Assembly (NCBI GenBank): GCA_002269645.1
Contig: NIVC01003103.1
Location: forward strand, 154,998-218,997
DNA length: 64,000 nucleotides
From: Macrostomum lignano
Lineage: Eukaryota
Reading direction: 5' to 3'
The notes beneath the pieces are model-generated. The model searched no databases, was not told the DNA's origin, and was given only the letters and a program-made list of their open reading frames with translations. The position numbers were made by a program, and so were the translations under genes. Positions 41,942-64,000 of the stretch are shown piece after piece (the first letter of the stretch is position 1; the number at the start of each line of letters is the position of its first letter).

Positions 41942-41954
41942 CTTGAGCCGGAAA

Positions 41955-42330
41955 ATTGGGGGTGGATGAGCAGGCGGCACAGCATGAACTCACTGACAAG
42001 GAGATCTAGAGCTCAAGCCTGGATTTGGGAACTTGGGGTGGGTGAGCAGGCGGCACAGCATGAACTGACTGCCAAAGAGGTCTAGAGCTCAAGTCTGGAT
42101 TTGGGAACTTGGGGTGGATGAGCAGGCGGCACAGCATGAACTGACTGCCAAGGAGATCTAGAGCTCAAGCCTGGATTTGGGAAACTTGGAGTGGGTGAGC
42201 AGGCGGCACAGCATGAACTGACTGCCAAGGAGATCTAGAGCTCAAGCCTGGATTTGGGAAACTTGGAGTGGGTGAGCAGGCGGCACAGCATGAACTGACT
42301 GCCAAGGATATTTAGAGCTCAACTCTGGAT
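41955..42330. repeat. 76-77-bp tandem repeat (x5) abutting the SUPT7L 5' end
   Basis: GCAGGCGGCACAGCATGAACT recurs at about 41970, 42046, 42122, 42199 and 42276. Confidence 0.93.
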
Positions 42331-42855
42331 TTTGCCTAGAGCAGTGCTCAAGTGAGCAATGAAAATAGAACACAGAAGCTGTTTAAGCATAGAAGCTGAG
42401 AGCAAATTCCGCACAGTCCACACGGGCAATGACTTTAATAGTAGAATTTGCATCAGGTAGCGCCGCTTATGACTAGGTGGGATAATCCAGGAACACATCT
42501 CAATGCGCTCTTTTCTACTATTAAGTTAATATAACATCAACAAATCAGCAGTAGTAAGCAGTGCGTTAAATAATCTTTTTTAGAACATCAGTGGCTATTT
42601 TTAGATTGGCGTATTGAACTAACAAAACAGACAAAGCGCTTAAATTAAGTGTCCGCTTCTGAACTAAAGGAAAGACAAAGCATAGAGAAGGGAATTAAGA
42701 AGTTTGGGAAGGTCCGACTGGGACCAGATCAATGCATAAATATCGAATAGAAACAGCAGAATGATAAACTGAGTTTAAGAAAGTCTATGAAAATAGTAAG
42801 TATTGTAATAGTACTTTTTGTCCGTCATCTGCTTTGGATACAGCAGGATTCGGTG

Positions 42856-43296: not shown

Positions 43297-43971
43297 TCAA
43301 GGCAGCTCCAGAGCTTTGGCTTCGCTGTACAGTCGCTGGGTCTGGTCGTAGACATCCTTCAGACAGGGCACGGCCTCGGTCACCAGCTGGCGCACCCCGG
43401 CAGCATCGCAGGCGTTCTGCTGCGCCATGTTGGCCAGCAGGGTCTCGCGCGATGGCAGCAGGTAAAGCGCCAGCCCGACCGCCTTGCGCACCGCCCAGGG
43501 ATGGTGATTGGCCAGCGACTCGTTGTAGGACTCGCCGGCGATGCTGGAGATGGACTTGTCAGCTGGCGCGCTGACCAGCCGGTCCAGCAGCAGCACAAGG
43601 AAGAGCAGCGCCCGGTGCAGCCGCAGCAGAGTGCGGGAGCCGTTCTCCTTGCCAGCGAAGCCGCCGGCCGATTCGAACTGCAGCATGCCGGCGATGCTGG
43701 AGAAGCTGGCGGCCTCCGGGCCGACGATATGGGAGCGCAGGATGCGCAGCTTCGAGTCCACGTCCTGCACCACGAAGTAGAAGGCCTTGTTGAGGCTGCG
43801 CAGGAAGTGCAGCAGCTGGTCGTAGCCGTCGGCATAGGCGGCGAGGCCGAGGCCGGGCTGGGCGCGGCAGCGGTTGAAGCTGGCGGTCAGCTCGGCCAGG
43901 GAGAATCCCTGCTGGCTGCCGGGCTGCTCCGGAGGCTGCTGCTGCTGCGGCTCTGGGACTTCGGCTGACAT
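43297..43971 (-). CDS. CPTP: Ceramide-1-phosphate transfer protein (GLTP-fold), intronless CDS, 224 aa
   Basis: DVDSKLRIL and GSRTLLRLHRAL (K/R/R phosphate-binding pattern of CPTP/ACD11 rather than GLTP); LANHHPWAVRKAV. Confidence 0.9.
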   Translation of the reverse strand: MSAEVPEPQQQQPPEQPGSQQGFSLAELTASFNRCRAQPGLGLAAYADGYDQLLHFLRSLNKAFYFVVQDVDSKLRILRSHIVGPEAASFSSIAGMLQFESAGGFAGKENGSRTLLRLHRALLFLVLLLDRLVSAPADKSISSIAGESYNESLANHHPWAVRKAVGLALYLLPSRETLLANMAQQNACDAAGVRQLVTEAVPCLKDVYDQTQRLYSEAKALELP

Positions 43972-44044
43972 TCTGGGCTGAAACAGGGACGCATAAAGGG
44001 CAACTGGCAGTGCGAGGTGAGACGAAATGCGAGGGTTTATCTTT

Positions 44045-44050: not shown

Positions 44051-44149
44051 ACAATTACTGCCCGTTCCGCCGACTCCCCTGAGCAGGTTATACGGCCACT
44101 ACATGCATGGGTCAGGTGTGAGGCTCTGGTAGGCTGACAATGGCCGGCC

Positions 44150-46661
44150 TGAAGATCTAGGGCGATAATCCAGACTGAAGATCTAGGACGATAATCCAGA
44201 CTGAAGATCTAGGGCGATAATCCAGACTGAAGATCTAAGGACGATAATCCAGACTGAAGATCTAGGACGATAATCCAGACTGAAGATCTAGGGCGATAAT
44301 CCAGACTGAAGATCTAGGGTGATAATCCAGACTGAAGATCTAGGGCGATAATCCAGACTGAAGATCTAGGGCGATAATACAGACTGAAGATCTAGGGCGA
44401 TAATCCAGACTGAAGATCTATGGCGATAATCCAGACCGAGGAACTAGGGCGATAATCCAGACTGAAGATCTAGGGCGATAATCCAGACTGAAGATCTATG
44501 GCGATAATCCAGACTGAAGATCTAGGGCGATAATCCAGACTGAAGATCTAGGGTGATAATCCAGACTGAAGATCTAGGGCGATAATCCAGACTGAAGATC
44601 TAGGGCGATAATCCAGACTGAAGATCTATGGCGATAATCCAGACCGAGGAACTAGGGCGATAATCCAGACTGAAGATCTAGGGCGATAATCCAGACTGAA
44701 GATCTAGGGCGATAATCCAGATTGAAGATCTAGGGGGCGAAAACCCAGTCTGAGGATCTAGGGAGCGATAATCCAGATTGAAGATCTAGGGGGCGATAAT
44801 CCAGCTTGAAGATCTAGGGGGCGATAACCCAGATTGAAGATTTAGGGGGCGAAAACCCAGTCTGAGGATCTAGGGAGCGATAATCCAGATTGAAGATCTA
44901 GGGGGCGATAATCCAGCTTGAAGATCTAGGGGGCGATAATCCAGCTTGAAGATCTAGGGGGCGAAAACCCGCCTGAGGATCTAGAGGGCGAAAACCCGCC
45001 TGAGGATCTACAGGGGCGAAAACCAAGTCTGAGGATCTAGGGAGCGATAATCCAGATTGAAGATCTAGGGGGCGATAATCCAGATTGAAGATCTAGGGGG
45101 CGATAATCCAGATTGAAGATCTAGGGGGCGATAATCCAGCTTGAAGATCTACGGAGCGATAATCCAGCTTGAAGATCTACGGGGCGATAATCCAGCCTGA
45201 AGATCTAAGGGGCGATAATCCAGCCTGAAGATCTAAGGGGCGATAATCCAGATTGAAGATCTAGGGAGCGATAATCCAGCTTGAAGATCTACGGAGCGAT
45301 AATCCAGCTTGAAGATCTACGGGGCGATAATCCAGCCTGAAGATCTAAGGGGCGATAATCCAGCCTGAAGATCTAAGGGGCGATAATCCAGCCTGAAGAT
45401 CTAGGGGGCGATAATCCAGCCTGAAGATCTAAGGGGCGATAATCCAGCCTGAAGATCTAGGGGGCGATAATCCAGCCTGAAGATCTAAGGGGCGATAATC
45501 CAGATTGAAGATCTAGGAGGCGATAATCCAGCCTGAAGATCTAAGGGGCGATAATCCAGCCTGAAGATCTAAGGGGCGATAATCCAGCCTGAAGATCTAA
45601 GGGGCGATAATCCAGCCTGAAGATCTAAGGGGCGATAATCCAGCCTGAAGATCTAAGGGGCGATAATCCAGCCTGAAGATCTAAGGGGCGATAATCCAGC
45701 CTGAAGATCTAAGGGGCGATAATCCAGCCTGAAGATCTAAGGGGCGATAATCCAGCCTGAAGATCTAAGGGGCGATAATCCAGCCTGAAGATCTAAGGGG
45801 CGATAATCCAGCCTGAAGATCTAAGGGGCGATAATCCAGCCTGAAGATCTAGGAGGCGATAATCCAGCCTGAAGATCTAGGAGGCGATAATCCAGCTTGA
45901 AGATCTAAGGGGCGATAATCCAGCTTGAAGATCTACGGAGCGATAATCCAGCTTGAAGATCTACGGGGCGATAATCCAGCCTGAAGATCTAAGGGGCGAT
46001 AATCCAGCTTGAAGATCTAAGGGGCGATAATCCAGCCTGAAGATCTAAGGGGCGATAATCCAGCCTGAAGATCTAGGGGGCGATAATCCAGCCTGAAGAT
46101 CTAGGGGGCGATAATCCAGCCTGAAGATCTAGGGGGCGATAATCCAGCCTGAAGATCTAGGAGGCGATAATCCAGCCTGAAGATCTAGGGGGCGATAATC
46201 CAGCCTGAAGATCTAGGGGGCGATAATCCAGCCTGAAGATCTAGGAGGCGATAATCCAGCCTGAAGATCTAGGAGGCGATAATCCAGCCTGAAGATCTAG
46301 GGGGCGATAATCCAGCCTGAAGATCTAGGGGGCGATAATCCAGCCTGAAGATCTAGGGGGCGATAATCCAGCCTGAAGATCTAGGGGGCGATAATCCAGC
46401 CTGAAGATCTAGGGGGCGATAATCCAGCCTGAAGATCTAGGAGGCGATAATCCAGCCTGAAGATCTAGGGGGCGATAATCCAGCCTGAAGATCTAGGAGG
46501 CGATAATCCAGCCTGAAAATCTAGGAGGCGATAATCCAGCCTGAAGATCTAGGAGGCGATAATCCAGCCTGAAGATCTAGGAGGCGATAATCCAGCCTGA
46601 AGATCTAGGAGGCGATAATCCAGCCTGAAGATCTAGGAGGCGATAATCCAGCCTGAAGATC
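44150..46661. repeat. Polar 26-to-28-bp minisatellite CTGAAGATCTAGGG(GG)CGATAATCCAG(A/C)
   Basis: 26-bp units to ~44730, diverged zone to ~45060, then 28-bp units. Confidence 0.97.
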
Positions 46662-46835
46662 TACAACCCAACCCAAGGACAATAAAGAAACAGGAAGTAA
46701 CGATTCGCCATGAAATATTTTGTACATCTTAGCGCATCTAAGCGCTATTTCTGTTTGCTATATTTTATTACGGTTCAATAACACAAGAAAATGCTGTGGG
46801 ATAGTACGCCATTGCAGCGGCCAGTGGCAGGCTGG

Positions 46836-48038
46836 CTAGTCAGCGATGGCCAGCGGTAGGAGGCGCCGCCGGTCAGAGTGAAATTTGGTTGCCAAGTCGT
46901 CCGGCCGGGCGGCCGAGGGCAGCCGTTCAAGGACGCGCGGCCCCAGCTCGCAGAAGTCGCGCAGCCCGCCGGCCACCGCGGCGGCCTCGGTCGCGGACTC
47001 GTCCGGCGGCACCGGCTGAGTCAGGGCGGCCAGCAGGGCCTCCTGGGAGTTCAGCAGGCCGTCCATGTCTTCGGCGCCCAGCTCGAACATGCCCTCGGCG
47101 CACTCGCTCAGGTGTCGGCACGCCGGCGGCAGCGACCAGGCCAGGAGGGGCCGCCAGCCCAGAGCCGCGTCGCCAACCAGCGCGGGGTCTAGAGCGGAGG
47201 CGCGAGCGGCGCCACGCCGGGCCGCGGACAAAAGGCGCGCCGTCTGGTACGGCTCCAGTTCGCCTTCGCCGGGGAAGAGAAGCGCCGCTCGAGCTGCAGC
47301 CGCGCAATCTGGCGCCGGCGCCTCCAGCTCAAACAGGCGCGCGCGAAGATGCACCAGAGCTTGGCGCCGAAGGAGCGCGGGCTCAGGGCCAGGCGGCGGC
47401 GCGGTCGCCTGCGTCAGGCGCCACAGCGTCTCCAGCAAGCGTGCCAAGGGCAGGTCGTTCACGGCGGAGTTGAGCAGCATCAGCGGCGCGGCGGTGACGC
47501 GCGGGTCGGAGCGCAGCGCAACGCAGAGGTCTCGAACGAGGTGGCACAGCTGCGCCGGGCCGAGGTGGCGCGCGCGCGCCGCGGCCGCGCACTCGAGCAG
47601 CGTCAGGCGGGGATCGGCGCGCAGTGCCGCTAGCGCAGTCTTGCCGCCGGCCCCAAGGTGGCGCGCATGGTATGGCGCCGCGATGGCGCGGAGGCTGAGC
47701 GCCAGGTCCTCGGAGCTCATGGCGCGACAGTCGACGCTAAGAAAGAGGCTGGTGGCAGCAGCCGGGTCGGTGCCTTCGGCCTGCCAATTCCAGGCGGCCT
47801 CCAGATCCTCGCGAGTCACCAGCGACGACTGCGCGCTCGGGAGCCGCTGCTGCTGCTGCCGCTTTTCCGCGGCCTGCTGGGGCCGCTTTGGCCGCAGGCG
47901 GGCGGGGTAGAGCACGTGCTCCAGGTGCCGGCCGGACCGCACGTGGGCGGCGGCAGACGGTGGCGCCAACCGGCAGCCGGCGCCAATCGCCAAGAGGGCG
48001 CGGCTACGCCGCCAGAAAACTGCGGAGACGGCGGCCGG
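46836..48038 (-). CDS. Intronless Leu/Ala-rich helical protein with mitochondrial-presequence-like N-terminus; possibly FASTK-family; no genomic ATG
   Basis: About 400 open codons with GC-rich codon use; Arg-rich, acid-free N-terminus; ADPRLTLLECAAAARARHLGPAQLCHLVRDL resembles the FASTKD N-terminal helical region; AATAAA at 46764-46769. Family call is weak. Confidence 0.6.
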   Translation of the reverse strand, partial: PAAVSAVFWRRSRALLAIGAGCRLAPPSAAAHVRSGRHLEHVLYPARLRPKRPQQAAEKRQQQQRLPSAQSSLVTREDLEAAWNWQAEGTDPAAATSLFLSVDCRAMSSEDLALSLRAIAAPYHARHLGAGGKTALAALRADPRLTLLECAAAARARHLGPAQLCHLVRDLCVALRSDPRVTAAPLMLLNSAVNDLPLARLLETLWRLTQATAPPPGPEPALLRRQALVHLRARLFELEAPAPDCAAAARAALLFPGEGELEPYQTARLLSAARRGAARASALDPALVGDAALGWRPLLAWSLPPACRHLSECAEGMFELGAEDMDGLLNSQEALLAALTQPVPPDESATEAAAVAGGLRDFCELGPRVLERLPSAARPDDLATKFHSDRRRLLPLAIAD

Positions 48039-48196
48039 CTGCAAGTGGGAAATCGAGTTCCAGAGCTGCGGTGTTGTAAATTTGAATATTAGTGCTTAAA
48101 TATGATTCAGCAGATGAGAAATAGAAGGCCAAAAGTACAGAAATTGGCACAACAAGCGGCGGCGCCAAGCCGAAGGAATTTCCGGTTTTTTAATTA

Positions 48197-48202
48197 TTTA
48201 TT
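48197..48202 (-). terminator. AATAAA poly(A) signal for APEX1
   Basis: TTTATT on +, about 225 nt after the APEX1 stop. Confidence 0.55.
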
Positions 48203-48425
48203 CTTGTAAAAACAACCAGAGAACTTAAACTAGAAAATGAAGAGAAAATGGTTATAAAAATAGACCGGAACTCGAACTGTTAGTTGCTATGCAGAGAGTC
48301 AAGTTTAAAAGCACATACAATAATAACAATAGAAGTTTCGACGCTACAAGCTCAAAAAAAGCTACAACTGCTTAGCAGTAAATTAAGTGCAATGCATTGC
48401 TGGGCAGCCAGCAGTTCCCGGCAGG

Positions 48426-50390
48426 TCACAGGCTCAGCAGCAGCACAATGGGGCAGTGGTCGCTGCCCATCACGCTTGACCGGATGAGGCTGTCGCAGAC
48501 TCGGCCGGCCAGCCGCTTGGACACCAGAAAGTAGTCCAGCCGCCAGCCGATGTTCTGCGCCCTGGCGTTGCGCATGTAGGACCAGAAGGTGTACGCCTTG
48601 GTCTGGTCCGGGTGCACCTGCCGGAACGTGTCCACCAGGTCGAGGGAGCTCAGCATGGACGAGAAGCTGTCCCGCTCCTCCTTGGTAAAGCCTGCGGGGA
48701 GTTGCCACTTTATCATTTGAGTCCCTCATCATCTACCTGTCTACCTCACCATCTCCTGTCTACCTCACCATCTCCTGTCTACCTCACCATCTCCTGTCTA
48801 CCTCACCATCTCCTGCCTACCTCACCATCTCCTGCCTACTTCACTATCTTCTGTCTACCTCACTATCTCCTGCCTACCTCACCATCTCCTGCCTACCTCA
48901 CTATCTCCTGTCTACCTACCTGATCATCTTCTGGCCACCTCACCACGACACTATCTCACCTTCTCCCTCCCTGTCTACCTCATCTTTCTGCCTCACAAAC
49001 CCCATCTATTTTAGCATATCGATATCTTACTGCCCAAATCACCCCTATATTAGTTCAAGTCCTTTCTGTGTGCCTTATACACCAGATTAGGTAACTCGCC
49101 ATGTTTATCAGTGCTGCCCTCCAGCAACCAGGCTCCGCCCACCAATCCAGCCTCCCTGTCTCCATCTGTGCCTAATGCTGACTGTCCTTCAGCCAAGCCG
49201 CAGCTTCCTCACCCGCCGTGCGCTGGTTGGTCTTGGGATTGGCCAGGTCGATCTCCAGGTGCGCAACGTTGAGGTCGCCGCAGACAATCACCGGCTTGAC
49301 GGCGTCCAGGCCGCGCAGGTAGGCGGCAAAGTCTTTGTCCCATTCGGACACTCTGTACTTTAGCCTGGCCAGCTGGCGCCCGCTGTTCGGTACGTAGGCG
49401 GTCACAAAGTAGAACTTCTCGAACTCCGCCGTGATCACCCGGCCTTCGCCGTCGTGCTTGGCGGCGCCGATGCCCTCCTTGACGGACAGCGGCTTGTCGC
49501 GGCTGTAGATGCCCGTGCCCGCGTAGCCGTCCTTGTCCGCCGAGCTGAACAGCGCGTGGTAGCCGGGAATGCTGGCTTCCGGGGGCACCTTGGCCGAGGG
49601 GCACTTGATCTCCTGGGATGATCCGGCCAGGGGGCAGTGGGATTATGGATTAGGATTTACGGTATCAATGTGATAATCTTATCGAATAACTTGTGATATC
49701 TAGATAATCCAATGGGATAATCCAATAGGATCTGTACCCTATGATCCTATGGGATACAATGGGATAACTGTGATAATCCAATCTGTATCGATGGGATAAT
49801 CCTACGGGATAACTTGTGATAATCCAGTCTGTATAGATGGGATAATTCTATGGGATAACTTGTGGTAATCCAATGGGATCACTTGTGATAATCCAGTCGG
49901 CATGGCATTCACACAGGATAATCCAACCGCATCAATGAAGATAATCCATTAGAATTGATACATTGGATATTCTATTCCATTGAAAAGCAAACTGGGTCAA
50001 ATGGGGATAATCCAACAAGGACTAATCAATGCACATTCGCACCTGGACTCCAATGATGAAGGGCGCCTCCTCAAGCAAATAACGAGTGCCATTGTTCTTC
50101 AGCCAGGCGCGCAGGCCGTTGATATTCCAGGAGGCCAGCTTCAGGCTCCAGGGCCGGCCTTCAGCGTCCTTGGCAGCGGGGCATTCCAGCGATGTGGCTG
50201 AAGTGCTGGGAGCTGCCGCAGTGCTGGGAGCAGCCGCAGCTGCAGGTGCATCCGAGTCCTTCTTAGCAGCAGCCTTGGCAGGCTTCTTTTCCTTGCCAGC
50301 TGAACTCTCTGAAGCAGCCTCATCCAGCTTTGCCCGCTTGCTGCCAGCAGCCTTTGGCTTGGATGTTGACTGCCTCTTCTTGGGTGGCAT
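48426..50390 (-). CDS. APEX1: AP endonuclease 1 (ExoIII family), 3 exons, 337 aa
   Basis: Exons 50043-50390, 49213-49612, 48426-48691. MPPKKR N-terminus; SWNINGLRAW, VQ|EIKC, GYAGTG, TAYVPNSG, CGDLNVAH, GWRLDYF, GSDHCP. Confidence 0.97.
48727..48980. repeat. 19-bp repeat CTACCTCACCATCTCCTGT in APEX1 intron 2
   Basis: Period 19, decaying. Confidence 0.9.
49640..49995. repeat. Degenerate GATAATCC-based repeat in APEX1 intron 1
   Basis: Many GATAATCCA/GGGATAA motifs. Confidence 0.75.
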
Positions 50391-51360
50391 TCTCTGGCTG
50401 CATGCATGAGTCAGTGGCAGATATTCAGAAATATGGATTTGCCATTATAATGGCTTGTATACAAAGCCTAGTTACAATATATGCACAATTTTGCACCAAC
50501 TTTAAAGCATGTTGCAACTATTAGATAAGAGTAGGCTGCTGCTAATGTCACAATTGTTTTATTATTGGACAAGCAGTTTATTTAGCTTGAAACAATGGAT
50601 TACATGATTGTTGAAAAATTAAGCTTAGGATGAAGTTAATACATTTTTTATTTGAAAAAGGAAAGCTTTGGACAATAAACTCTCAAATTCATCTTGTTAG
50701 GTTTGTCTTTACTAGAGTTTAGACATTGTTTATATAGTTATAACAAAGTATAATTTATATATTACAGTTTGCAACTTAGAATAGGTTTTTTTAGCTTATT
50801 AGTCTAAAACATAAAAAAGTTGGTCAACAATAATAGAAAACTTCATATGAATATATAAAGAAAATTAATTATCAAAGGGTCCATTTGATCTTAAAATTTC
50901 ATTTGAGGGCTAACACTATTGGAATCTTATATCTAAAGCTGAGTGGATTGATCAACCGGTCAGGTTTAACGCGTATCTCCTCATAGACGGCTGCCAACTC
51001 AAATTCGGAACTTATATATATCACACAAACTGTTCCTCGAGTTTTGAACTTTGAGAGAAGATACTTATATTGCTGGAAAGATCTTTCAATGCTGATATAA
51101 GTTGCTTGCTTTAAGTATGAAAACTAAAAGCACAGCATTTGAAAAACAATTTCTATACTTTAAACTTTCTGCAGAGATTGTAATTATTTTTGCGAGACAC
51201 AATAGATAAATTTGGGGGCTTCAACTTCTAACTGCCACTGTGTATTGGAGGTTTGATTTAGATTGCGAAATCATTTTGTTAACTTTAACTAAGACTGATA
51301 CTGACTAAAATCGATTGCACAATCAATTGGTTTAATTGGTTCAATTTTTTATTATTGGCA

Positions 51361-53587
51361 CTGTGTCCCCGTGTCACCTCGGCTTTTGCGTGTGGATGTG
51401 AGACTGCGAGGCTGTAACGCCCGGCTGTTCTGCGCATATGCACCAACAGCTGCCCATCAGCATGAGGTGCAGGAGTTCTTTGATTTCCTGTCAGAGCAGC
51501 TCGAGTCGGTCGCAATGCGTGACACTTTGGCAGTGCTTGGCAATCTCAACGCTGTCGCGGAGAGGTCCCAGCGCTCCCCGTTCGTGTCCCCGCGCCAGAA
51601 TGGCAACTCTAGTGCGCTTGCAGACCTTAATGTCGCGGCAAGATCTGGTGTCGGCGAACACGCGCTTCCGCAAGCCAGCTTTTCGTTTGGCGACTTTCGC
51701 TGGTTGTAAGCAAAGAAAGCGGAATGCGTGCCGAAACGCCACGAGGCGCCGGGCCCAGCTCGACCACATTCTTGTTCGTAACCGCGAGCGCAGTCGAGTG
51801 ACAGACTGCGACACGATGGCCCCGCTGTCCATCCGATCCGACCACTGCCTGCTTTTCTGCAACCTTCGCATCCGGGATCCGCTGTACAGGCCGCCCAAGC
51901 GACCCCCATGCCGCTATTTCCGGGCTCTGCAAGATTCTAGCACCTGCAGCAGGTTCGCGTACGCGTTTGCCACCGCACTGGGAGAGTCTGCGAGCACCGG
52001 TAACTACTCTGAAATTAGCGCGGCAGTAGCGATGGCAGCGAGCAAAACTCTGCCACTGATGAAATCTGCAGCCCATAGTCTCCCTGTCTGGGTGGATGAC
52101 AAGGAGGTTCAAGAGGCGAGGCGGACAGTCGAGAGGCTGCGACGGTCCAGGAGACCGACGGCAGAGGCCAAGAAAGCCCTGTCAGACGTTTATGTCAGGC
52201 GGCAGCAAGCCGCTGTTGATGATGCCATCCGAAGCGTCACCTCCGCAGGGCTCGACCAACGGAATCGGCTCGTATGGCCGACAATCAACGCCTTGACTGG
52301 TTGCAAGAAGAAAACGGTGCTAAACTTGACCGGCGACACGCCAGAAGCGCGCAGAAATGAGCTACGCGACTTCTTTGCCGATATCGTCAACACGCCGCCA
52401 CCGCCTCTGCCAGAAGTGATGCCACTGCCGCTCGAGACGGCGCTGCCGTCGCAGGAAGATTTCAACACCCAGCCAGTGACCAGCAACGACATTGTGCAGT
52501 TCGCTCGCCAGGCGCCAGGAGGTCGCACCCCAGGACCGGACGAGGTGCCTATCGAGGTGCTGCGAGTCACAAGGGTCGCCATTGAGGTGGCTCGTGTGAT
52601 GAACGGTGTCCTTTCTGGAGATGCCGCGCCCCGCGAGTGGACAACTGCGCACATCGTCGCGATCCCGAAGAAGCCAGGCACGACACGGAAGGAGGAGCAC
52701 AGGGGGATCTTGCTTATGTCCTGCGCCGCGAAGCTGTTCAACCGGGTGCTGCTGGCTCGGTTACAGCCTGTGCTGGACCAGTTCCTGCGAACTGAGCAGA
52801 ATGGGTTCCGCCCACATCGCGGCACAGTGATGCAGATCCTAGCCCTCCGCCGCATCATCGAGGAGGCGCGCATCCATCAGTCAAGTCTCGTGGTGATCTT
52901 TTTTGATTTCCTCAAGGCCTTCGACTCGCTGGCTCGCGGCGCGCTGCCTCTCGTGCTTCGTGCGTACAATGTACCAGAGCAACTGATTTCCGCCATCATG
53001 GCGATGTACCAGGACACGACCGCTTCGGTGATGATGCCAGATGGACTGTCAGACCAATTCAGCACGTCGTCAGGCGTGCTGCAGGGTGACACTTTGGCGC
53101 ATTTTCTGTTTGTGCTGGCACTGGACTGGGTGCTGAGAACTGGCCTGCCCAACCTGGATGACGGCTTCCTTTTGAGAAGATGCACGAGTTGGCGGCACCC
53201 AGAGAAGCGGCTCTCCGTTCTCGGCTACGCAGACGACCTCGCGCTACTTTCATCGACGGCTGAAGGTGCCCAGTGGCTGCTTGATGGCCTGACGGCGGCA
53301 GCGTTGCGGGTCGGCCTTAAGCTGAACACGTGGAAGACGGTAGTGTTCACAGTGCCCTCCGACTTGCTGGCCGAGATCAATTACTGAGACGCTGCCGGGA
53401 ATGCATTTATGCTTACCCGCTGCAAGCGCTTTGTGTACCTTGGCAGTTCCGTGCCGGACGTTGCTGATGACCTGAAGAGACGACGAGGACTGGCCTGGGC
53501 CGCATTTCGATCTGTGCACTCCGTGCTCCAATCTGAGGCCCTGGACGACGGGCTCAAGGCTCGGCTGTTTCAGGCAGTCGTCGAGAC
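51361..53587 (+). mobile_element. Decayed non-LTR retrotransposon (RTE-like LINE): partial APE endonuclease plus reverse transcriptase, 5' and 3' truncated
   Basis: EN: CAYAPT, GNLNA, LDHILV, SDH. RT: PGPDEVP, IPKK, QNGFR, FFDFLKAFDS, GVLQGDTL, YADD, YLGS. +1 frameshift near 51625; in-frame TGA at 53385-53387 with the frame continuing to ~53587. Confidence 0.93.
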
Positions 53588-54662
53588 TGGCAACAAAGCA
53601 TGGCAACTTTTGACACTTAGGCCATTTTATATATGGTTGTTTTGATATACATTCCAAGTAGTAACTTACAGAAAATGCACCACACTATAAAGTCCTTTTG
53701 AAAATGCACTGGACAGAAATCTACCATTTAACAACTTTTTCCAATAGGAAAGCAATGCTTGACTTGATTTAAACTAAATCTAAGCTTTTAGCCTAAGCTA
53801 AATTAAATACCTCAAGATATCTAGGCCTATAGGGCCTTTTCTTATAGTTATATTTATAGGGCCTAGCTTAATGCTAATGAATTAAATAGGCCTATTCATT
53901 TTGCAAATAAAGTATTTCCTTTTAATAGCTAAAATAAAATCAAATTCTAAATCACAATAGTAGCTAGGCAAATATATTTTCTTTGTTGGTTTATATTAAT
54001 AAAGCTAAAGGAAAGGCAAACATTATAAAAATAACTTTGATATTTTGATGGATAATAAGTTAAATGACATGTTAAACTTAAGATTCCTGTCCTAATCCTA
54101 TTAGCCAATTATCCTAGTAGCATTTTGCTTTGGCCATTTTAATCTAGACCCAGAGTTTCAATGCCCATAATAAGATCTTTGACAATGAATGTCATGACAA
54201 TGAATGGCTATGTAAGTATAAAGTAATAAAGTTTATAAATCTTAATTGCAAATGATTCAATTTTACGTCTATACTCCCAGTACCAGAACCAGTACCAGAA
54301 CCAGTACCAAAAAATAAAATACAAAATACAAGTAAAAAAACGAAAAATAACCTACAAAAATGTCTAAAATAGTAAAAAATCAACTCTAGCAATTATTATA
54401 ACCGTTAACACAGCGTTCAAGTGGTTCAACATATTTCGTTTCAGCGAATTACATTACAGCATAACTTAATGCCTATTAAAATACTTATTTAAAAACTAAA
54501 AGTAAAACACCGAAATTTAACATTCTAGCTGAAAAACCTTAAAACAAATATATATAAAACTAAAAAAACCTATCAACAATTGGTGATGCCATAGATACAA
54601 TATAAATATACCAAAAAACTGTACATGTAATATGTTCAATTCCCGTAATTTTTCACCAAAAT

Positions 54663-57600
54663 TACTTTAGTGTACTTCGGCAGGAACCATTGTGAGTACG
54701 AAGCTGAAAACTGAGATCTGGAAGGAAACATTATCAATCTAGAAGCCTACAAGACGCCAAGGCTCCATCTGTTCCCTAATCGAACTTACAGACTCCCAAG
54801 TCCCCCCTGCTCAGTACACTCAGCTGCAGAAAGTACTTTAGTGTACTTCGGCAGGAACCATTGTGAGTACGAAGCTGAAAACTGAGATCTGGAAGGAAAC
54901 ATTATCAATCTAGAAGCCTACAAGACGCCAAGGCTCCATCTGTTCCCTACTCGAACTTACAGACTCCCAAGTCCCCCTGCTCAGTACATTAATATGCAGA
55001 AAGTACTTTAGTGTACTTCGACAAGAACCATTGTGAGTACGAAGCTGAAAACTGAGATCTGGAAGGAAACATTATCAATCTAGAAGCCTACAAGACGCCA
55101 AGGCTCCATCTGTTCCCTACTCGAACTTACAGACTCCCAAGTCCCCCCTGCTCAGTACATTAATATTCAGAAAGTACTTTAGTGTACTTCGGCAGGAACC
55201 ATTGTGAGTACGAAGCTGAAAACTGAGATCTGGAAGGAAACATTATCAATCTAGAAGCCTACAAGACGCCAAGGCTCCATCTGTTCCCTACTCGAACTTA
55301 CAGACTCCCAAGTCCCCCCTGCTCAGTACATTAATATGCAGAAAGTACTTTAGTGTACTTCGGCAGGAACCATTGTGAGTACGAAGCTGAAAACTGAGAT
55401 CTGGAAGGAAACATTATCAATCTAGAAGCCTACAAGACGCCAAGGCTCCATCTGTTCCCTACTCGAACTTACAGACTCCCAAGTCCCCCCTGCTCAGTAC
55501 ATTAATATGCAGAAAGTACTTTAGTGTACTTCGACAAGAACCATTGTGAGTACGAAGCTGAAAACTGAGATCTGGAAGGAAACATTATCAATCTAGAAGC
55601 CTACAAGACGCCAAGGCTCCATCTGTTCCCTACTCGAACTTACAGACTCCCAAGTCCCCCCTGCTCAGTACATTAATATGCAGAAAGTACTTTAGTGTAC
55701 TTCGACAAGAACCATTGTGAGTACGAAGCTGAAAACTGAGATCTGGAAGGAAACATTATCAATCTAGAAGCCTACAAGACGCCAAGGCTCCATCTGTTCC
55801 CTACTCGAACTTACAGACTCCCAAGTCCCCCTGCTCAGTACATTAATATGCAGAAAGTACTTTAGTGTACTTCGGCAGGAACCATTGTGAGTACGAAGCT
55901 GAAAACTGAGATCTGGAAGGAAACATTATCAATCTAGAAGCCTACAAGACGCCAAGGCTCCATCTGTTCCCTACTCGAACTTACAGACTCCCAAGTCCCC
56001 CTGCTCAGTACATTAATATGCAGAAAGTACTTTAGTGTACTTCGACAAGAACCATTGTGAGTACGAAGCTGAAAACTGAGATCTGGAAGGAAACATTATC
56101 AATCTAGAAGCCTACAAGACGCCAAGGCTCCATCTGTTCCCTACTCGAACTTACAGACTCCCAAGTCCCCCCTGCTCAGTACATTAATATGCAGAAAGTA
56201 CTTTAGTGTACTTCGACAAGAACCATTGTGAGTACGAAGCTGAAAACTGAGATCTGGAAGGAAACATTATCAATCTAGAAGCCTACAAGACGCCAAGGCT
56301 CCATCTGTTCCCTACTCGAACTTACAGACTCCCAAGTCCCCCCTGCTCAGTACATTAATATGCAGAAAGTACTTTAGTGTACTTCGACAAGAACCATTGT
56401 GAGTACGAAGCTGAAAACTGAGATCTGGAAGGAAACATTATCAATCTAGAAGCCTACAAGACGCCAAGGCTCCATCTGTTCCCTACTTGAACTTACAGAC
56501 TCCCAAGTCCCCCCTGCTCAGTACACTCAGCTGCAGAAAGTACTTTAGTGTACTTCGGCAGGAACCATTGTGAGTACGAAGCTGAAAACTGAGATCTGGA
56601 AGGAAACATTATCAATCTAGAAGCCTACAAGACGCCAAGGCTCCATCTGTTCCCTACTCGAACTTACAGACTCCCAAGTCCCCCTGCTCAGTACACTCAG
56701 CTGCAGAAAGTACTTTAGTGTACTTCGACAGGAACCATTGTGAGTACGAAGCTGAAAACTGAGATCTGGAAGGAAACATTATCAATCTAGAAGCCTACAA
56801 GACGCCAAGGCTCCATCTGTTCCCTACTCGAACTTACAGACTCCCAAGTCCCCCTGCTCAGTACATTAATATGCAGAAAGTACTTTAGTGTACTTCGACA
56901 AGAACCATTGTGAGTACGAAGCTGAAAACTGAGATCTGGAAGGAAACATTATCAATCTAGAAGCCTACAAGACGCCAAGGCTCCATCTGTTCCCTACTCG
57001 AACTTACAGACTCCCAAGTCCCCCCTGCTCAGTACATTAATATGCAGAAAGTACTTTAGTGTACTTCGACAAGAACCATTGTGAGTACGAAGCTGAAAAC
57101 TGAGATCTGGAAGGAAACATTATCAATCTAGAAGCCTACAAGACGCCAAGGCTCCATCTGTTCCCTACTCGAACTTACAGACTCCCAAGTCCCCCCTGCT
57201 CAGTACATTAATATGCAGAAAGTACTTTAGTGTACTTCGACAAGAACCATTGTGAGTACGAAGCTGAAAACTGAGATCTGGAAGGAAACATTATCAATCT
57301 AGAAGCCTACAAGACGCCAAGGCTCCATCTGTTCCCTACTCGAACTTACAGACTCCCAAGTCCCCCCTGCTCAGTACACTCAGCTGCAGAAAGTACTTTA
57401 GTGTACTTCGGCAGGAACCATTGTGAGTACGAAGCTGAAAACTGAGATCTGGAAGGAAACATTATCAATCTAGAAGCCTACAAGACGCCAAGGCTCCATC
57501 TGTTCCCTACTCGAACTTACAGACTCCCAAGTCCCCCTGCTCAGTACACTCAGCTGCAGAAAGTACTTTAGTGTACTTCGACAAGAACCATTGTGAGTAC

Positions 57601-60600
57601 GAAGCTGAAAACTGAGATCTGGAAGGAAACATTATCAATCTAGAAGCCTACAAGACGCCAAGGCTCCATCTGTTCCCTACTCGAACTTACAGACTCCCAA
57701 GTCCCCCCTGCTCAGTACATTAATATGCAGAAAGTACTTTAGTGTACTTCGGCAGGAACCATTGTGAGTACGAAGCTGAAAACTGAGATCTGGAAGGAAA
57801 CATTATCAATCTAGAAGCCTACAAGACGCCAAGGCTCCATCTGTTCCCTACTCGAACTTACAGACTCCCAAGTCCCCCTGCTCAGTACATTAATATGCAG
57901 AAAGTACTTTAGTGTACTTCGACAAGAACCATTGTGAGTACGAAGCTGAAAACTGAGATCTGGAAGGAAACATTATCAATCTAGAAGCCTACAAGACGCC
58001 AAGGCTCCATCTGTTCCCTACTCGAACTTACAGACTCCCAAGTCCCCCCTGCTCAGTACATTAATATGCAGAAAGTACTTTAGTGTACTTCGACAGGAAC
58101 CATTGTGAGTACGAAGCTGAAAACTGAGATCTGGAAGGAAACATTATCAATCTAGAAGCCTACAAGACGCCAAGGCTCCATCTGTTCCCTACTCGAACTT
58201 ACAGACTCCCAAGTCCCCCCTGCTCAGTACATTAATATGCAGAAAGTACTTTAGTGTACTTCGACAAGAACCATTGTGAGTACGAAGCTGAAAACTGAGA
58301 TCTGGAAGGAAACATTATCAATCTAGAAGCCTACAAGACGCCAAGGCTCCATCTGTTCCCTACTCGAACTTACAGACTCCCAAGTCCCCCCTGCTCAGTA
58401 CATCATGCAGAAAGTACTTTAGTGTACTTCGCAGGAACCATTGTGAGTACGAAGCTGAAAACTGAGATCTGGAAGGAAACATTATCAATCTAGAAGCCTA
58501 CAAGACGCCAAGGCTCCATCTGTTCCCTACTCGAACTTACAGACTCCCAAGTCCCCCTGCTCAGTACATCAGCTGCAGAAAGTACTTTAGTGTACTTCGA
58601 CAGGAACCATTGTGAGTACGAAGCTGAAAACTGAGATCTGGAAGGAAACATTATCAATCTAGAAGCCTACAAGACGCCAAGGCTCCATCTGTTCCCTACT
58701 CGAACTTACAGACTCCCAAGTCCCCCCTGCTCAGTACATTAATATGCAGAAAGTACTTTAGTGTACTTCGACAAGAACCATTGTGAGTACGAAGCTGAAA
58801 ACTGAGATCTGGAAGGAAACATTATCAATCTAGAAGCCTACAAGACGCCAAGGCTCCATCTGTTCCCTACTCGAACTTACAGACTCCCAAGTCCCCCCTG
58901 CTCAGTACATTAATATGCAGAAAGTACTTTAGTGTACTTCGACAAGAACCATTGTGAGTACGAAGCTGAAAACTGAGATCTGGAAGGAAACATTATCAAT
59001 CTAGAAGCCTACAAGACGCCAAGGCTCCATCTGTTCCCTACTCGAACTTACAGACTCCCAAGTCCCCCCTGCTCAGTACATTAATATGCAGAAAGTACTT
59101 TAGTGTACTTCGACAGGAACCATTGTGAGTACGAAGCTGAAAACTGAGATCTGGAAGGAAACATTATCAATCTAGAAGCCTACAAGACGCCAAGGCTCCA
59201 TCTGTTCCCTACTCGAACTTACAGACTCCCAAGTCCCCCCTGCTCAGTACATTAATATGCAGAAAGTACTTTAGTGTACTTCGACAGGAACCATTGTGAG
59301 TACGAAGCTGAAAACTGAGATCTGGAAGGAAACATTATCAATCTAGAAGCCTACAAGACGCCAAGGCTCCATCTGTTCCCTACTCGAACTTACAGACTCC
59401 CAAGTCCCCCCTGCTCAGTACATTAATATGCAGAAAGTACTTTAGTGTACTTCGACAAGAACCATTGTGAGTACGAAGCTGAAAACTGAGATCTGGAAGG
59501 AAACATTATCAATCTAGAAGCCTACAAGACGCCAAGGCTCCATCTGTTCCCTACTCGAACTTACAGACTCCCAAGTCCCCCCTGCTCAGTACATTAATAT
59601 GCAGAAAGTACTTTAGTGTACTTCGACAAGAACCATTGTGAGTACGAAGCTGAAAACTGAGATCTGGAAGGAAACATTATCAATCTAGAAGCCTACAAGA
59701 CGCCAAGGCTCCATCTGTTCCCTACTCGAACTTACAGACTCCCAAGTCCCCCCTGCTCAGTACATTAATATGCAGAAAGTACTTTAGTGTACTTCGACAG
59801 GAACCATTGTGAGTACGAAGCTGAAAACTGAGATCTGGAAGGAAACATTATCAATCTAGAAGCCTACAAGACGCCAAGGCTCCATCTGTTCCCTACTCGA
59901 ACTTACAGACTCCCAAGTCCCCCCTGCTCAGTACATTAATATGCAGAAAGTACTTTAGTGTACTTCGACAAGAACCATTGTGAGTACGAAGCTGAAAACT
60001 GAGATCTGGAAGGAAACATTATCAATCTAGAAGCCTACAAGACGCCAAGGCTCCATCTGTTCCCTACTCGAACTTACAGACTCCCAAGTCCCCCCTGCTC
60101 AGTACATTAATATGCAGAAAGTACTTTAGTGTACTTCGACAAGAACCATTGTGAGTACGAAGCTGAAAACTGAGATCTGGAAGGAAACATTATCAATCTA
60201 GAAGCCTACAAGACGCCAAGGCTCCATCTGTTCCCTACTCGAACTTACAGACTCCCAAGTCCCCCCTGCTCAGTACATTAATATGCAGAAAGTACTTTAG
60301 TGTACTTCGACAAGAACCATTGTGAGTACGAAGCTGAAAACTGAGATCTGGAAGGAAACATTATCAATCTAGAAGCCTACAAGACGCCAAGGCTCCATCT
60401 GTTCCCTACTCGAACTTACAGACTCCCAAGTCCCCCTGCTCAGTACATATGCAGAAAGTACTTTAGTGTACTTCGACAGGAACCATTGTGAGTACGAAGC
60501 TGAAAACTGAGATCTGGAAGGAAACATTATCAATCTAGAAGCCTACAAGACGCCAAGGCTCCATCTGTTCCCTACTCGAACTTACAGACTCCCAAGTCCC

Positions 60601-63600: not shown

Positions 63601-64000
63601 AGCCTACAAGACGCCAAGGCTCCATCTGTTCCCTACTCGAACTTACAGACTCCCAAGTCCCCCTGCTCAGTACATTAATATGCAGAAAGTACTTTAGTGT
63701 ACTTCGACAGAACCATTGTGAGTACGAAGCTGAAAACTGAGATCTGGAAGGAAACATTATCAATCTAGAAGCCTACAAGACGCCAAGGCTCCATCTGTTC
63801 CCTACTCGAACTTACAGACTCCCAAGTCCCCCTGCTCAGTACATTAATATGCAGAAAGTACTTTAGTGTACTTCGACAAGAACCATTGTGAGTACGAAGC
63901 TGAAAACTGAGATCTGGAAGGAAACATATCAATCTAGAAGCCTACAAGACGCCAAGGCTCCATCTGTTCCCTACTCGAACTTACAGACTCCAAGTCCCCC
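54663..64000. repeat. 170-171-bp tandem array, about 55 highly similar copies, runs off the window
   Basis: GTGAGT at 54692 recurs at 54863 (period 171); variants limited to C5/C6 tract, TTAATAT vs CTCAGC block, and CGACAAG/CGGCAGG. Confidence 0.98.

What the first reader, a model, noticed from the sequence alone, without database searches (positions are those of the whole stretch)
46836..48098. Mitochondrial-type presequence whose initiator Met must come from outside the gene
A strong acceptor TTCCCACTTGCAG| is followed in phase 0 by CCG GCC GCC GTC..TGG CGG CGT AGC CGC. An in-frame TAA lies at 48096-48098, and the first Met is ~107 codons in, past the presequence. The upstream 380 bp is APEX1 3' UTR/spacer with no in-frame ATG. 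An SL-donated AUG would create MPAAVSAVFWRRSRALL, a typical targeting peptide, making import dependent on trans-splicing. This is the cleanest of the three cases in the window.
Basis: partly seen in the sequence, partly recalled or inferred. Interest (0 to 1): 0.75.

Follow-up and report, generated by a model that had tools for sequence, protein, structure and literature searches.

The report
Flatworm gene relying on spliced-leader AUG
This is a Macrostomum lignano (flatworm) orphan gene sitting just downstream of APEX1 in an operon; it has no start codon of its own for its first 106 codons and probably borrows the AUG at the end of the trans-spliced leader, a trick already known in flatworms, but a second splice site 19 bases further on, which is the one used in the public annotation of this very copy, would put that AUG out of frame.

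Summary
On the minus strand an AG (48040-48039) is followed in phase 0 by a 400-codon ORF (48038-46839, TAG 46838-46836). An in-frame TAA lies at 48098-48096, the first ATG in any frame is codon 107, and the 387-nt spacer back to APEX1 has no in-frame ATG. The window is M. lignano contig NIVC01003103.1. The M. lignano spliced leader ends in ATG, and use of the SL AUG as initiator is established in flatworms (Cheng 2006). Codon-usage, GC-periodicity and three-copy substitution tests show frame 0 is coding from about codon 31-41 on, so an in-frame start upstream is needed. The SL AUG at this acceptor is the only AUG candidate.

Two caveats remain:
- **Second acceptor.** A second AG (48021-48020) lies 19 nt downstream. 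At the second site the SL AUG is out of frame and opens a 68-codon overlapping ORF.
- **Presequence unproven.** The "mitochondrial presequence" is only compositionally plausible (40 acid-free residues, net +6). The protein is an orphan with no homologs, and no trained predictor was available.

Verdict: a new example of a known mechanism, less clean than claimed.

The parts
48039..48040 (-). Site A: AG of the candidate trans-splice acceptor (cacttgcAG|CCG). The SL AUG would be in frame (phase 0) with the ORF.
   Evidence: It fits the motif [T/C]TNCAG (PMC8629364). The annotated CDS of paralog L001 (P0001) starts at the homologous base. The AG is kept in all three copies although 5- and 6-bp indels lie immediately upstream.
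48020..48021 (-). Site B: AG of a second candidate acceptor (gtctccgcAG|TTTTCTGG), 19 nt downstream of A. The SL AUG would be out of frame (frame +1).
   Evidence: The window's own annotated 5'-partial CDS (P0005, 393 aa) and that of copy L002 (P0004) begin at TTC 48017, two bases after this AG.
46839..48038 (-). 400-codon ORF of orphan gene X (Mlig011745 family), single exon. The stop TAG follows at 46838-46836.
   Evidence: Among three genomic copies there are 22 variable sites, none at codon position 2, and no indels. pN/pS is 0.18. GC3 is 0.84 against GC2 0.56-0.59.
47919..48038 (-). Codons 1-40: basic, acid-free N-terminal stretch, (M)PAAVSAVFWRRSRALLAIGAGCRLAPPSAAAHVRSGRHL. Candidate mitochondrial presequence.
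   Evidence: with the added Met, 40 residues without D/E (the longest such run in the protein), net +6, maximum hydrophobic moment 0.44. The coding signal here is weak.
47718..47720 (-). First ATG of the gene in any frame (codon 107, context cgcgccATGa). Fallback initiation site giving a 294-aa protein.
47816..47818 (-). TGA that ends the 68-codon frame+1 ORF opened by the SL AUG if splicing is at site B.
48096..48098 (-). In-frame TAA upstream of site A. It closes the frame toward the spacer.
48041..48425 (-). APEX1 3'UTR plus intercistronic spacer (39 % GC), with AATAAA at 48202-48197. It holds no in-frame ATG.
   Evidence: Indels among the copies are confined to this region.
48426..50390 (-). 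Upstream operon gene APEX1 (ATG 50390, stop TGA 48428-48426, with introns).
   Evidence: P0006. It shares the transcriptional-unit name Mlig011745 with gene X. Mlig011745.g2 is flagged TRANSSPLICED in the PMC5816591 supplement.
46764..46769 (-). AATAAA poly(A) signal of gene X, about 70 nt after its stop codon.

Best explanation
Gene X is an orphan, all-helical, Ala/Leu/Arg-rich protein gene of Macrostomum lignano. It is the cistron downstream of APEX1 in an operon resolved by the spliced leader (SL).

Its mRNA 5' end is made by SL trans-splicing, not by a promoter-proximal exon. The gene has no ATG in its first 106 codons. When the 35-nt SL (...TTGCATG) is joined at acceptor A (48039|48038), its terminal AUG lies in phase 0 and opens a 401-residue protein, MPAAVSAVFWRRSR... 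The first roughly 40 residues of that protein look like a cleavable basic targeting peptide, most likely mitochondrial.

A tandem acceptor B, 19 nt downstream, competes with A. At B the SL AUG is out of frame. Those mRNAs can yield at best the 294-residue protein from Met107, by leaky scanning past the weak-context SL AUG or by reinitiation after a 68-codon overlapping ORF.

**Shown:** sequence anatomy, organism, operon context, coding frame from about codon 31-41 on, absence of any ATG, and annotated 5' ends at A in one copy and at B in two copies.
**Inferred:** actual SL junction usage in this copy, initiation at the SL AUG, and mitochondrial import.
For: - **Organism and gene.** P0001, 'BOX15_Mlig011745g4, partial', is 99 % identical. 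L003, from NIVC01003103.1, is contained in the window.
- **SL ends in ATG.** The M. lignano SL is CGGTCTCTTACTGCGAAGACTCAATTTATTGCATG, with acceptor motif [T/C]TNCAG, 30 % of genes trans-spliced, and operon spacers of about 100 bp (PMC8629364).
- **SL AUG as initiator is documented.** Cheng 2006 is summarised in PMC9851317, PMC12582326 and PMC3510090. SmSirt7 is an example (PMC3772001). It is noted for Macrostomum in PMC10468722.
- **Annotated 5' ends reflect SL reads.** The Mlig_3_7 annotation cuts transcripts at trans-splice peaks taken from SL-bearing reads (TBONE, PMC5730564). The annotated 5'-partial CDSs begin exactly after an AG for X in L001, for the GLTP gene and for the next gene.
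- **Composition changes at site A.** GC jumps from 39 % to 73 % there.
- **Frame 0 is coding upstream of Met107.** The LLR for codons 41-106 is 25.7, reached by 0 of 2000 shuffles. GC periodicity has p = 0.0004. In codons 1-106 there are 10 variable sites among three copies, none at codon position 2 (p = 0.017), and no indels.
- **No ATG of its own.** No ATG in any frame precedes codon 107, and the spacer has no in-frame ATG.
- **Upstream of A is non-coding.** The 5- and 6-bp indels directly 5' of AG-A show this.
- **N-terminal features.**
Against: - This contig's own annotation and copy L002 start the mRNA at site B, where the SL AUG is out of frame. Site A may therefore be minor or unused in this copy.
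- Codons 1-30 show no significant coding signal. The cumulative LLR is flat up to about codon 30, and 131 of 2000 shuffles reach the observed value for codons 1-40.
- The SL AUG has a poor initiation context (U at -3, C at +4).
- No RNA reads could be examined directly.
- No homolog outside M. lignano exists to test conservation of the N-terminus.
- Resemblance to a mitochondrial targeting sequence arises easily from GC-rich DNA, and the hydrophobic moment is only moderate.
Confidence: 0.6

Rival explanations
1. In this copy the real trans-splice site is B (48020|48019). The SL AUG is then out of frame, the 'presequence' is 5'UTR, and the protein made is the 294-residue product starting at Met107. 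Ribosomes would reach Met107 by leaky scanning, since no other AUG intervenes, or by reinitiation after the 68-codon overlapping ORF.
For: - The annotated 5'-partial CDSs of the window copy (P0005) and of L002 (P0004) start two bases after AG-B.
- The two copies annotated from B have TTGCAG at site A. The one copy annotated from A has CTTCAG, which suggests A is weaker in this copy.
- Met107 has a better context (G at -3, A at +4).
- Codons 1-30 lack a coding signal.
Against: - Codons 41-106 are clearly coding in frame 0, which a 5'UTR would not be.
- There are no indels and no codon-position-2 changes in codons 1-106 across three copies.
- The frame+1 ORF opened at B has no coding support beyond about codon 30.
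- Paralog L001 is annotated from site A.
Confidence: 0.22
2. Translation starts at an in-frame near-cognate codon inside the first 42 codons (TTG16, ATT18, TTG24, GTG33, CTG39 or GTG42), independently of the SL AUG. The protein would then lack most or all of the basic N-terminal stretch.
For: The cumulative frame-0 codon-usage signal only starts to rise at about codon 31-40, close to GTG33, CTG39 and GTG42.
Against: - All candidate codons have a pyrimidine at -3.
- On SL-spliced mRNA an AUG lies upstream in every case.
- Atypical codon usage in the first 30 codons is also what a targeting peptide would give.
Confidence: 0.07
3. Acceptor A is used in cis. A donor inside the last APEX1 codons (ATT|GTGCTG, 48447|48446) splices in frame to CCG 48038 and gives an APEX1-X fusion protein whose Met is the APEX1 ATG.
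For: The older automatic gene models P0007 (...SDHCPI|PAAVSAVFW...) and P0002 fuse APEX1 to X at or near this junction, and the P0007 junction is in frame.
Against: - The donor GTGCT departs from the M. lignano consensus GT[G/A]AG.
- The models come from ab initio prediction on an earlier assembly and fuse many unrelated genes (P0007 is 2871 aa). P0002 carries frameshifts.
- The RNA-guided Mlig_3_7 annotation separates the two genes. There APEX1 has its own stop, and an AATAAA follows it in the sequence.
Confidence: 0.04
4. The long protein is made from the SL AUG, but the N-terminal stretch is not a mitochondrial presequence. It could be an ER signal peptide (n-region ...WRRSR, h-region ALLAIGAGC) or just a basic low-complexity tail produced by GC-rich codons.
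For: - There is a short hydrophobic core after the RRSR.
- The hydrophobic moment is only 0.44, lower than in internal helices.
- Acid-free, Arg-rich 40-residue windows occur in 1-19 % of out-of-frame windows of the same DNA.
- No homolog or domain links the mature protein to mitochondria.
Against: - In the true frame the only 40-residue acid-free run is at the N-terminus (P about 0.007 given 11.7 % D+E elsewhere).
- There are six Arg and no Lys.
- The stretch is rich in Ala, Ser and Leu.
- The h-region of 8-9 residues with two Gly is weak for a signal peptide.
Confidence: 0.35

Closest known systems
Flatworm SL 3'-terminal AUG used as initiator methionine (Cheng, Cohen, Ndegwa & Davis 2006, J Biol Chem 281:733). 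Examples: more than 40 S. mansoni cDNAs, SmSirt7, E. granulosus transcripts.
   Same: - The SL exon ends in AUG.
- The acceptor sits in phase 0 at the 5' end of an ORF that has no AUG of its own for its N-terminal part.
- The 5'-partial annotation begins at the splice site.
   Different: - This is a free-living macrostomid rather than a neodermatan.
- The recipient is an orphan protein, so the N-terminus cannot be checked against orthologs.
- A tandem acceptor 19 nt downstream would put the AUG out of frame.
- No cDNA or junction read was seen here.
SL-resolved operons of M. lignano (Wudarski 2017; Ustyantsev & Berezikov 2021) and of nematodes
   Same: - Same-strand neighbour (APEX1).
- Poly(A) signal about 160 nt before the acceptor.
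- Shared transcriptional-unit name.
- Further same-strand genes downstream (a GLTP-domain gene and one more), separated by tandem-repeat-inflated spacers, as described for this species.
   Different: There is no specialised SL2-type leader in M. lignano. Operon membership is inferred here from annotation and spacing, not from precursor reads.
Alternative trans-splicing that adds or removes a mitochondrial targeting signal in Trypanosoma brucei (Nilsson 2010, PMC2916883)
   Same: The choice of trans-splice acceptor would decide whether an N-terminal targeting peptide is translated.
   Different: In trypanosomes the AUGs lie in the pre-mRNA and the SL carries none. Here the AUG itself would come from the SL, and the switch would work by changing its reading frame.
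slORFs (SL-created ORFs; slORFfinder, PMC9851317)
   Same: An ORF whose start codon is supplied by the leader. At site B the SL AUG would create an overlapping upstream ORF.
   Different: That work used ribosome footprints in nematodes, Oikopleura and trypanosomes. No such data exist here.

Membership tests
SL-AUG-initiated flatworm mRNA (Cheng 2006 class) | The organism's spliced-leader exon ends in AUG. | tested here: met
   The published M. lignano SL is ...TTGCATG (PMC8629364; PMC10468722). The organism was identified. The SL RNA gene itself is not in the window.
SL-AUG-initiated flatworm mRNA (Cheng 2006 class) | The trans-splice acceptor is actually used, and it places the SL AUG in frame with the main ORF. 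| tested here: inconclusive
   Site A is in phase 0 and is the annotated 5' end in paralog L001. The window copy and L002 are annotated from site B, which is out of frame. No reads were available.
SL-AUG-initiated flatworm mRNA (Cheng 2006 class) | No in-frame AUG of the gene's own upstream of, or within, the N-terminal coding part. | tested here: met
   No ATG in any frame lies between 48038 and 47721. The spacer ATGs are out of frame, and a TAA lies at 48098.
SL-AUG-initiated flatworm mRNA (Cheng 2006 class) | The AUG-less N-terminal part is really coding (normally shown by conservation with orthologs). | tested here: inconclusive
   Met for codons 41-106 (LLR 25.7, 0 of 2000 shuffles; periodicity p = 0.0004). 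Not significant for codons 1-40. There are no orthologs to compare.
Downstream gene of an SL-resolved operon | A same-strand upstream gene with its own stop and poly(A) signal, a short spacer to the acceptor, and a common transcriptional unit. | tested here: met
   APEX1 stop at 48428-48426, AATAAA at 48202-48197 and acceptor at 48039. APEX1 and X share the TU-cluster name Mlig011745. APEX1 is flagged TRANSSPLICED. Precursor RNA was not seen directly.
N-terminal mitochondrial presequence | 20-50 residues, no acidic residues, rich in Arg, Ala, Ser and Leu, net positive. | tested here: met
   40 acid-free residues, six Arg, net +6, the longest acid-free run of the protein. The specificity of this criterion is low in GC-rich DNA.
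N-terminal mitochondrial presequence | Amphipathic helix and an MPP cleavage motif, scored by a trained predictor (TargetP, MitoFates, MitoProt). | not testable with these tools
   Only a crude hydrophobic moment could be computed (0.44, moderate). R-2/R-3-like motifs (RAL|L, VRS|G) were seen by eye and carry little information. The AF2 single-sequence model has pLDDT 44.
N-terminal mitochondrial presequence | The mature protein belongs to a mitochondrial family, or import has been shown. | tested here: not met
   No Pfam domain, no PDB relative, and no homolog outside M. lignano among 1.84 billion representatives. Import is not testable here.

The most novel reading that the evidence does not exclude
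Two tandem trans-splice acceptors 19 nt apart act as a frame switch for the leader's AUG. Splicing at A yields a 401-residue protein carrying a presequence. Splicing at B puts the AUG out of frame, so only the 294-residue Met107 protein can be made, without the targeting peptide. Acceptor choice would then set the protein's localisation. Acceptor strength appears to differ between gene copies of this hidden polyploid (CTTCAG against TTGCAG at site A).
Probability: 0.2. Interest if true: 0.55.

Novelty: new member of a known kind. Interest (0 to 1): 0.3.

Why it matters
If confirmed, this would be a clear free-living-flatworm example in which more than 100 codons, including a probable targeting peptide, can only be translated thanks to the AUG carried by the spliced leader. 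That bears on why all flatworm leaders keep a 3' AUG. M. lignano has transgenesis, so the case could be tested.

It also has a practical side. Such genes are annotated as '5'-partial' or wrongly fused to their operon neighbours, as in P0002 and P0007.

The mechanism itself has been known since 2006, so this single locus adds an example rather than a principle.

Tried and rejected
- **Rfam scan of the window** and a **search for the SL sequence**: no SL RNA gene is present.
- **Pfam, PDB, the 5.8-billion k-mer search and the full phmmer scan of 1.84 billion representatives**: no family was found for protein X. The one distant hit, P0003, is a frameshifted translation of the same M. lignano locus, running on into the GLTP gene. 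It is not an independent homolog.
- **AlphaFold2 on the single sequence**: pLDDT 44, all helices. This is too poor for a fold search, so none was run.
- **Bacterial-type promoter and terminator scan**: irrelevant for a eukaryote.
- **Supplements and full-text search for Mlig011745**: only APEX1 (g2, TRANSSPLICED) was found. There was nothing on gene X.
- **An alternative upstream AG** (ccgcAG|CTCTGG at 48067-48066): it is also in frame in this copy. I rejected it because it lacks the motif and becomes out of frame in L001, which has a 5-bp insertion.
- **An ATG-bearing mini-exon in the spacer**: rejected. Both spacer ATGs are out of frame with the ORF and closed by stops within 3-4 codons, and neither is followed directly by a GT donor.

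Full report
**What is in the sequence**

The feature lies on the minus strand.
- The context tttcccacttgcAG (AG at 48040-48039) is followed by CCG GCC GCC GTC TCC GCA GTT TTC TGG CGG CGT AGC CGC...
- The frame stays open for 400 codons to TAG 46838-46836.
- An in-frame TAA lies 20 codons upstream, at 48098-48096.
- The first ATG is codon 107 (47720-47718). No ATG occurs in any of the three frames between the acceptor and that codon.
- The upstream gene ends ...SDHCPIVLLLSL* (TGA 48428-48426). It matches APE1/APEX1 structures at E = 1e-31.
- The 387-nt spacer is 39 % GC. It carries an AATAAA at 48202-48197 and only two ATGs, both out of frame and closed within 3-4 codons.

**Where the window comes from**

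The ORF product is 99 % identical to 'hypothetical protein BOX15_Mlig011745g4, partial' of Macrostomum lignano (P0001). The window itself is contig NIVC01003103.1 of assembly Mlig_3_7: locus L003 is contained in the window. Two further genomic copies were retrieved:
- L001 (NIVC01002900.1), 96.7 % identical over the locus;
- L002 (NIVC01001883.1).

M. lignano is a hidden polyploid (PMC10468722), so several near-identical copies are expected.

**Background from the literature**

- M. lignano trans-splices one 35-nt leader, CGGTCTCTTACTGCGAAGACTCAATTTATTGCATG, onto about 30 % of its genes. The acceptor motif is [T/C]TNCAG. About 15 % of genes are in operons, with a modal repeat-corrected spacer of about 100 bp (PMC8629364).
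- All flatworm leaders end in AUG. Cheng et al. (2006) showed that this AUG can serve as the initiator. [quoted passage not shown] This is summarised in PMC9851317, PMC12582326 and PMC3510090. SmSirt7 is a worked example (PMC3772001).
- The Mlig_3_7 annotation was built by cutting transcriptional units at peaks of SL-bearing reads (TBONE) and then calling ORFs with TransDecoder (PMC5730564). That explains the many '5'-partial' proteins.

**Operon context**

- APEX1 and gene X carry the same transcriptional-unit cluster name (Mlig011745 g2/g1 and g4).
- APEX1 (g2) is flagged TRANSSPLICED in a published supplement.
- Downstream on the same strand lie a GLTP-domain gene and one more gene. Their annotated CDSs also begin immediately after an AG (tttcag|CCCAGAATG at 43977; ctcaag|GCGAGG at 41941).
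- The spacers between them are inflated by tandem repeats: a 28-bp unit x 91.5 copies and a 77-bp unit x 5 copies. This is as described for the species.

Gene X is therefore very probably an internal operon gene whose 5' end is created by trans-splicing.

**Is the ATG-less N-terminal part coding?**

The open frame alone is not significant. For 106 codons of this composition, the probability of no stop is 0.21. Other evidence is stronger:
1. GC rises from 39 % to about 73 % exactly at the AG. GC1/GC2/GC3 are 0.75/0.59/0.84 in codons 1-106, against 0.81/0.56/0.84 in the rest. Periodicity has p = 0.0004 for codons 41-106.
2. A codon-usage likelihood trained on APEX1, GLTP and X codons 107-400 favours frame 0 by 25.7 nats for codons 41-106. 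That is the same per-codon value as the control region, and 0 of 2000 dinucleotide shuffles reach it.
3. Among the three copies the ORF has 22 variable sites: none at codon position 2 (P = 1e-4), 14 of them synonymous, and no indel. In codons 1-106 there are 10 variable sites, none at position 2 (P = 0.017).
4. Directly upstream of the AG the copies differ by 5- and 6-bp indels, so that sequence is not coding.

The weak point is the first 30-40 codons. There the cumulative likelihood is flat and not significant (131 of 2000 shuffles). This fits a compositionally odd targeting peptide. It fits equally well a non-translated leader with initiation near codons 33-42.

- This contig's own annotated protein (P0005, 393 aa, 5'-partial) and that of copy L002 (P0004) begin FWRRSR..., at TTC 48017, two bases after AG-B. 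A transcript starting at 48019 would give exactly this.
- Only copy L001 is annotated from site A (PAAVS...).
- At site B the SL AUG reads MFSGGVAAPS... in frame +1 and stops after 68 codons, at TGA 47818-47816. The next AUG in any frame is Met107.
- The two copies annotated from B have TTGCAG at site A. The copy annotated from A has CTTCAG. With n = 3 this is only a hint, but it suggests a copy-specific difference in acceptor strength.

So site A is probably a genuine trans-splice site of this gene family. In this particular copy it may be the minor site.

**The 'presequence'**

With the SL Met, the N-terminus is MPAAVSAVFWRRSRALLAIGAGCRLAPPSAAAHVRSGRHL.
- It has 40 residues without Asp or Glu. 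That is the longest such run in the protein (P about 0.007 given 11.7 % D+E elsewhere).
- It has six Arg and a net charge of +6.
- Its hydrophobic moment is moderate, 0.44.

This is compatible with a mitochondrial targeting peptide. The criterion is not specific, however. Out-of-frame translations of the same DNA give acid-free, stop-free windows with at least 5 basic residues in 1-19 % of positions. No trained predictor was available.

The mature protein gives no help:
- no Pfam domain;
- no PDB relative;
- no homolog outside M. lignano in a full HMMER scan of 1.84 billion representatives;
- a low-confidence all-helical AF2 model.

**Rivals**

1. Site-B splicing with initiation at Met107, so that no presequence is made from this copy. 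I give this about 0.2.
2. Near-cognate initiation at TTG16, ATT18, TTG24, GTG33, CTG39 or GTG42. All have poor contexts. About 0.07.
3. A cis-splice from ATT|GTGCTG inside the last APEX1 codons to site A. It is in frame and is exactly what the old ab initio model P0007 shows (...DHCPI|PAAVS...). The donor is weak, however, and the RNA-guided annotation keeps the genes apart. About 0.04.

Separately, the N-terminal stretch may not be mitochondrial at all. I give that about 0.35.

**Verdict**

The locus is a new, plausible, but not clean example of an SL-donated initiator. Its most interesting aspect is that tandem acceptors 19 nt apart may switch the leader's AUG in and out of frame. Counting SL junction reads at the two sites in public RNA-seq would settle it.

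Noticed in passing
window 43297-43977 (minus): Single-exon GLTP-domain gene (Pfam PF08718, E = 1.6e-33). Its annotated CDS starts right after tttcag| with CCC AGA ATG, so the SL AUG would be in frame two codons ahead of the gene's own ATG, giving MPRMSAEV...
   Followed up: partly
window 41941 downward (minus); acceptor AG 41943-41942: Third same-strand gene, with its annotated start right after an unusual ctcaAG| acceptor. It is ATG-less (ARPAADPW...), its first in-frame Met is at codon 95, and its N-terminus is acidic. No Pfam domain was found in exon 1. This is another candidate for SL-AUG initiation.
   Followed up: partly
window 50390-50405 (minus): The APEX1 start ATG (50390) is preceded by gcatgcag|CCAGAGA. 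If that is its SL acceptor, the SL AUG lies 7 nt upstream and out of frame, and opens a 26-codon overlapping ORF. APEX1 (Mlig011745.g2) is listed as TRANSSPLICED in the PMC5816591 supplement.
   Followed up: partly
window 44147-46663: A 28-bp tandem repeat (GCCTGAAGATCTAGGGGGCGATAATCCA) x 91.5 copies fills the spacer between gene X and the GLTP gene. The array is far shorter in copy L001, where the whole X-to-GLTP spacer is about 870 nt. It is an example of repeat-inflated operon spacers.
   Followed up: partly
window 54659-64000: A 171-bp satellite, about 55 copies at 98 % identity, runs to the end of the window.
   Followed up: no
window 51438-53387 (plus): A 649-aa ORF with a reverse-transcriptase domain (RVT_1, E = 3e-24). 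It is a non-LTR retrotransposon fragment lying upstream of APEX1 on the opposite strand.
   Followed up: partly
window 48724-48917 and 41950-42332: A 19-bp x 10 tandem repeat lies just upstream of the final APEX1 coding block, probably in an intron. A 77-bp x 5 repeat abuts the acceptor of the third gene.
   Followed up: no
proteins P0002, P0003 and P0007 (public databases): Older automatic gene models of M. lignano fuse APEX1, gene X and even the GLTP gene into single proteins, some with frameshifts. This shows how operons without modelled trans-splicing are mis-annotated.
   Followed up: partly
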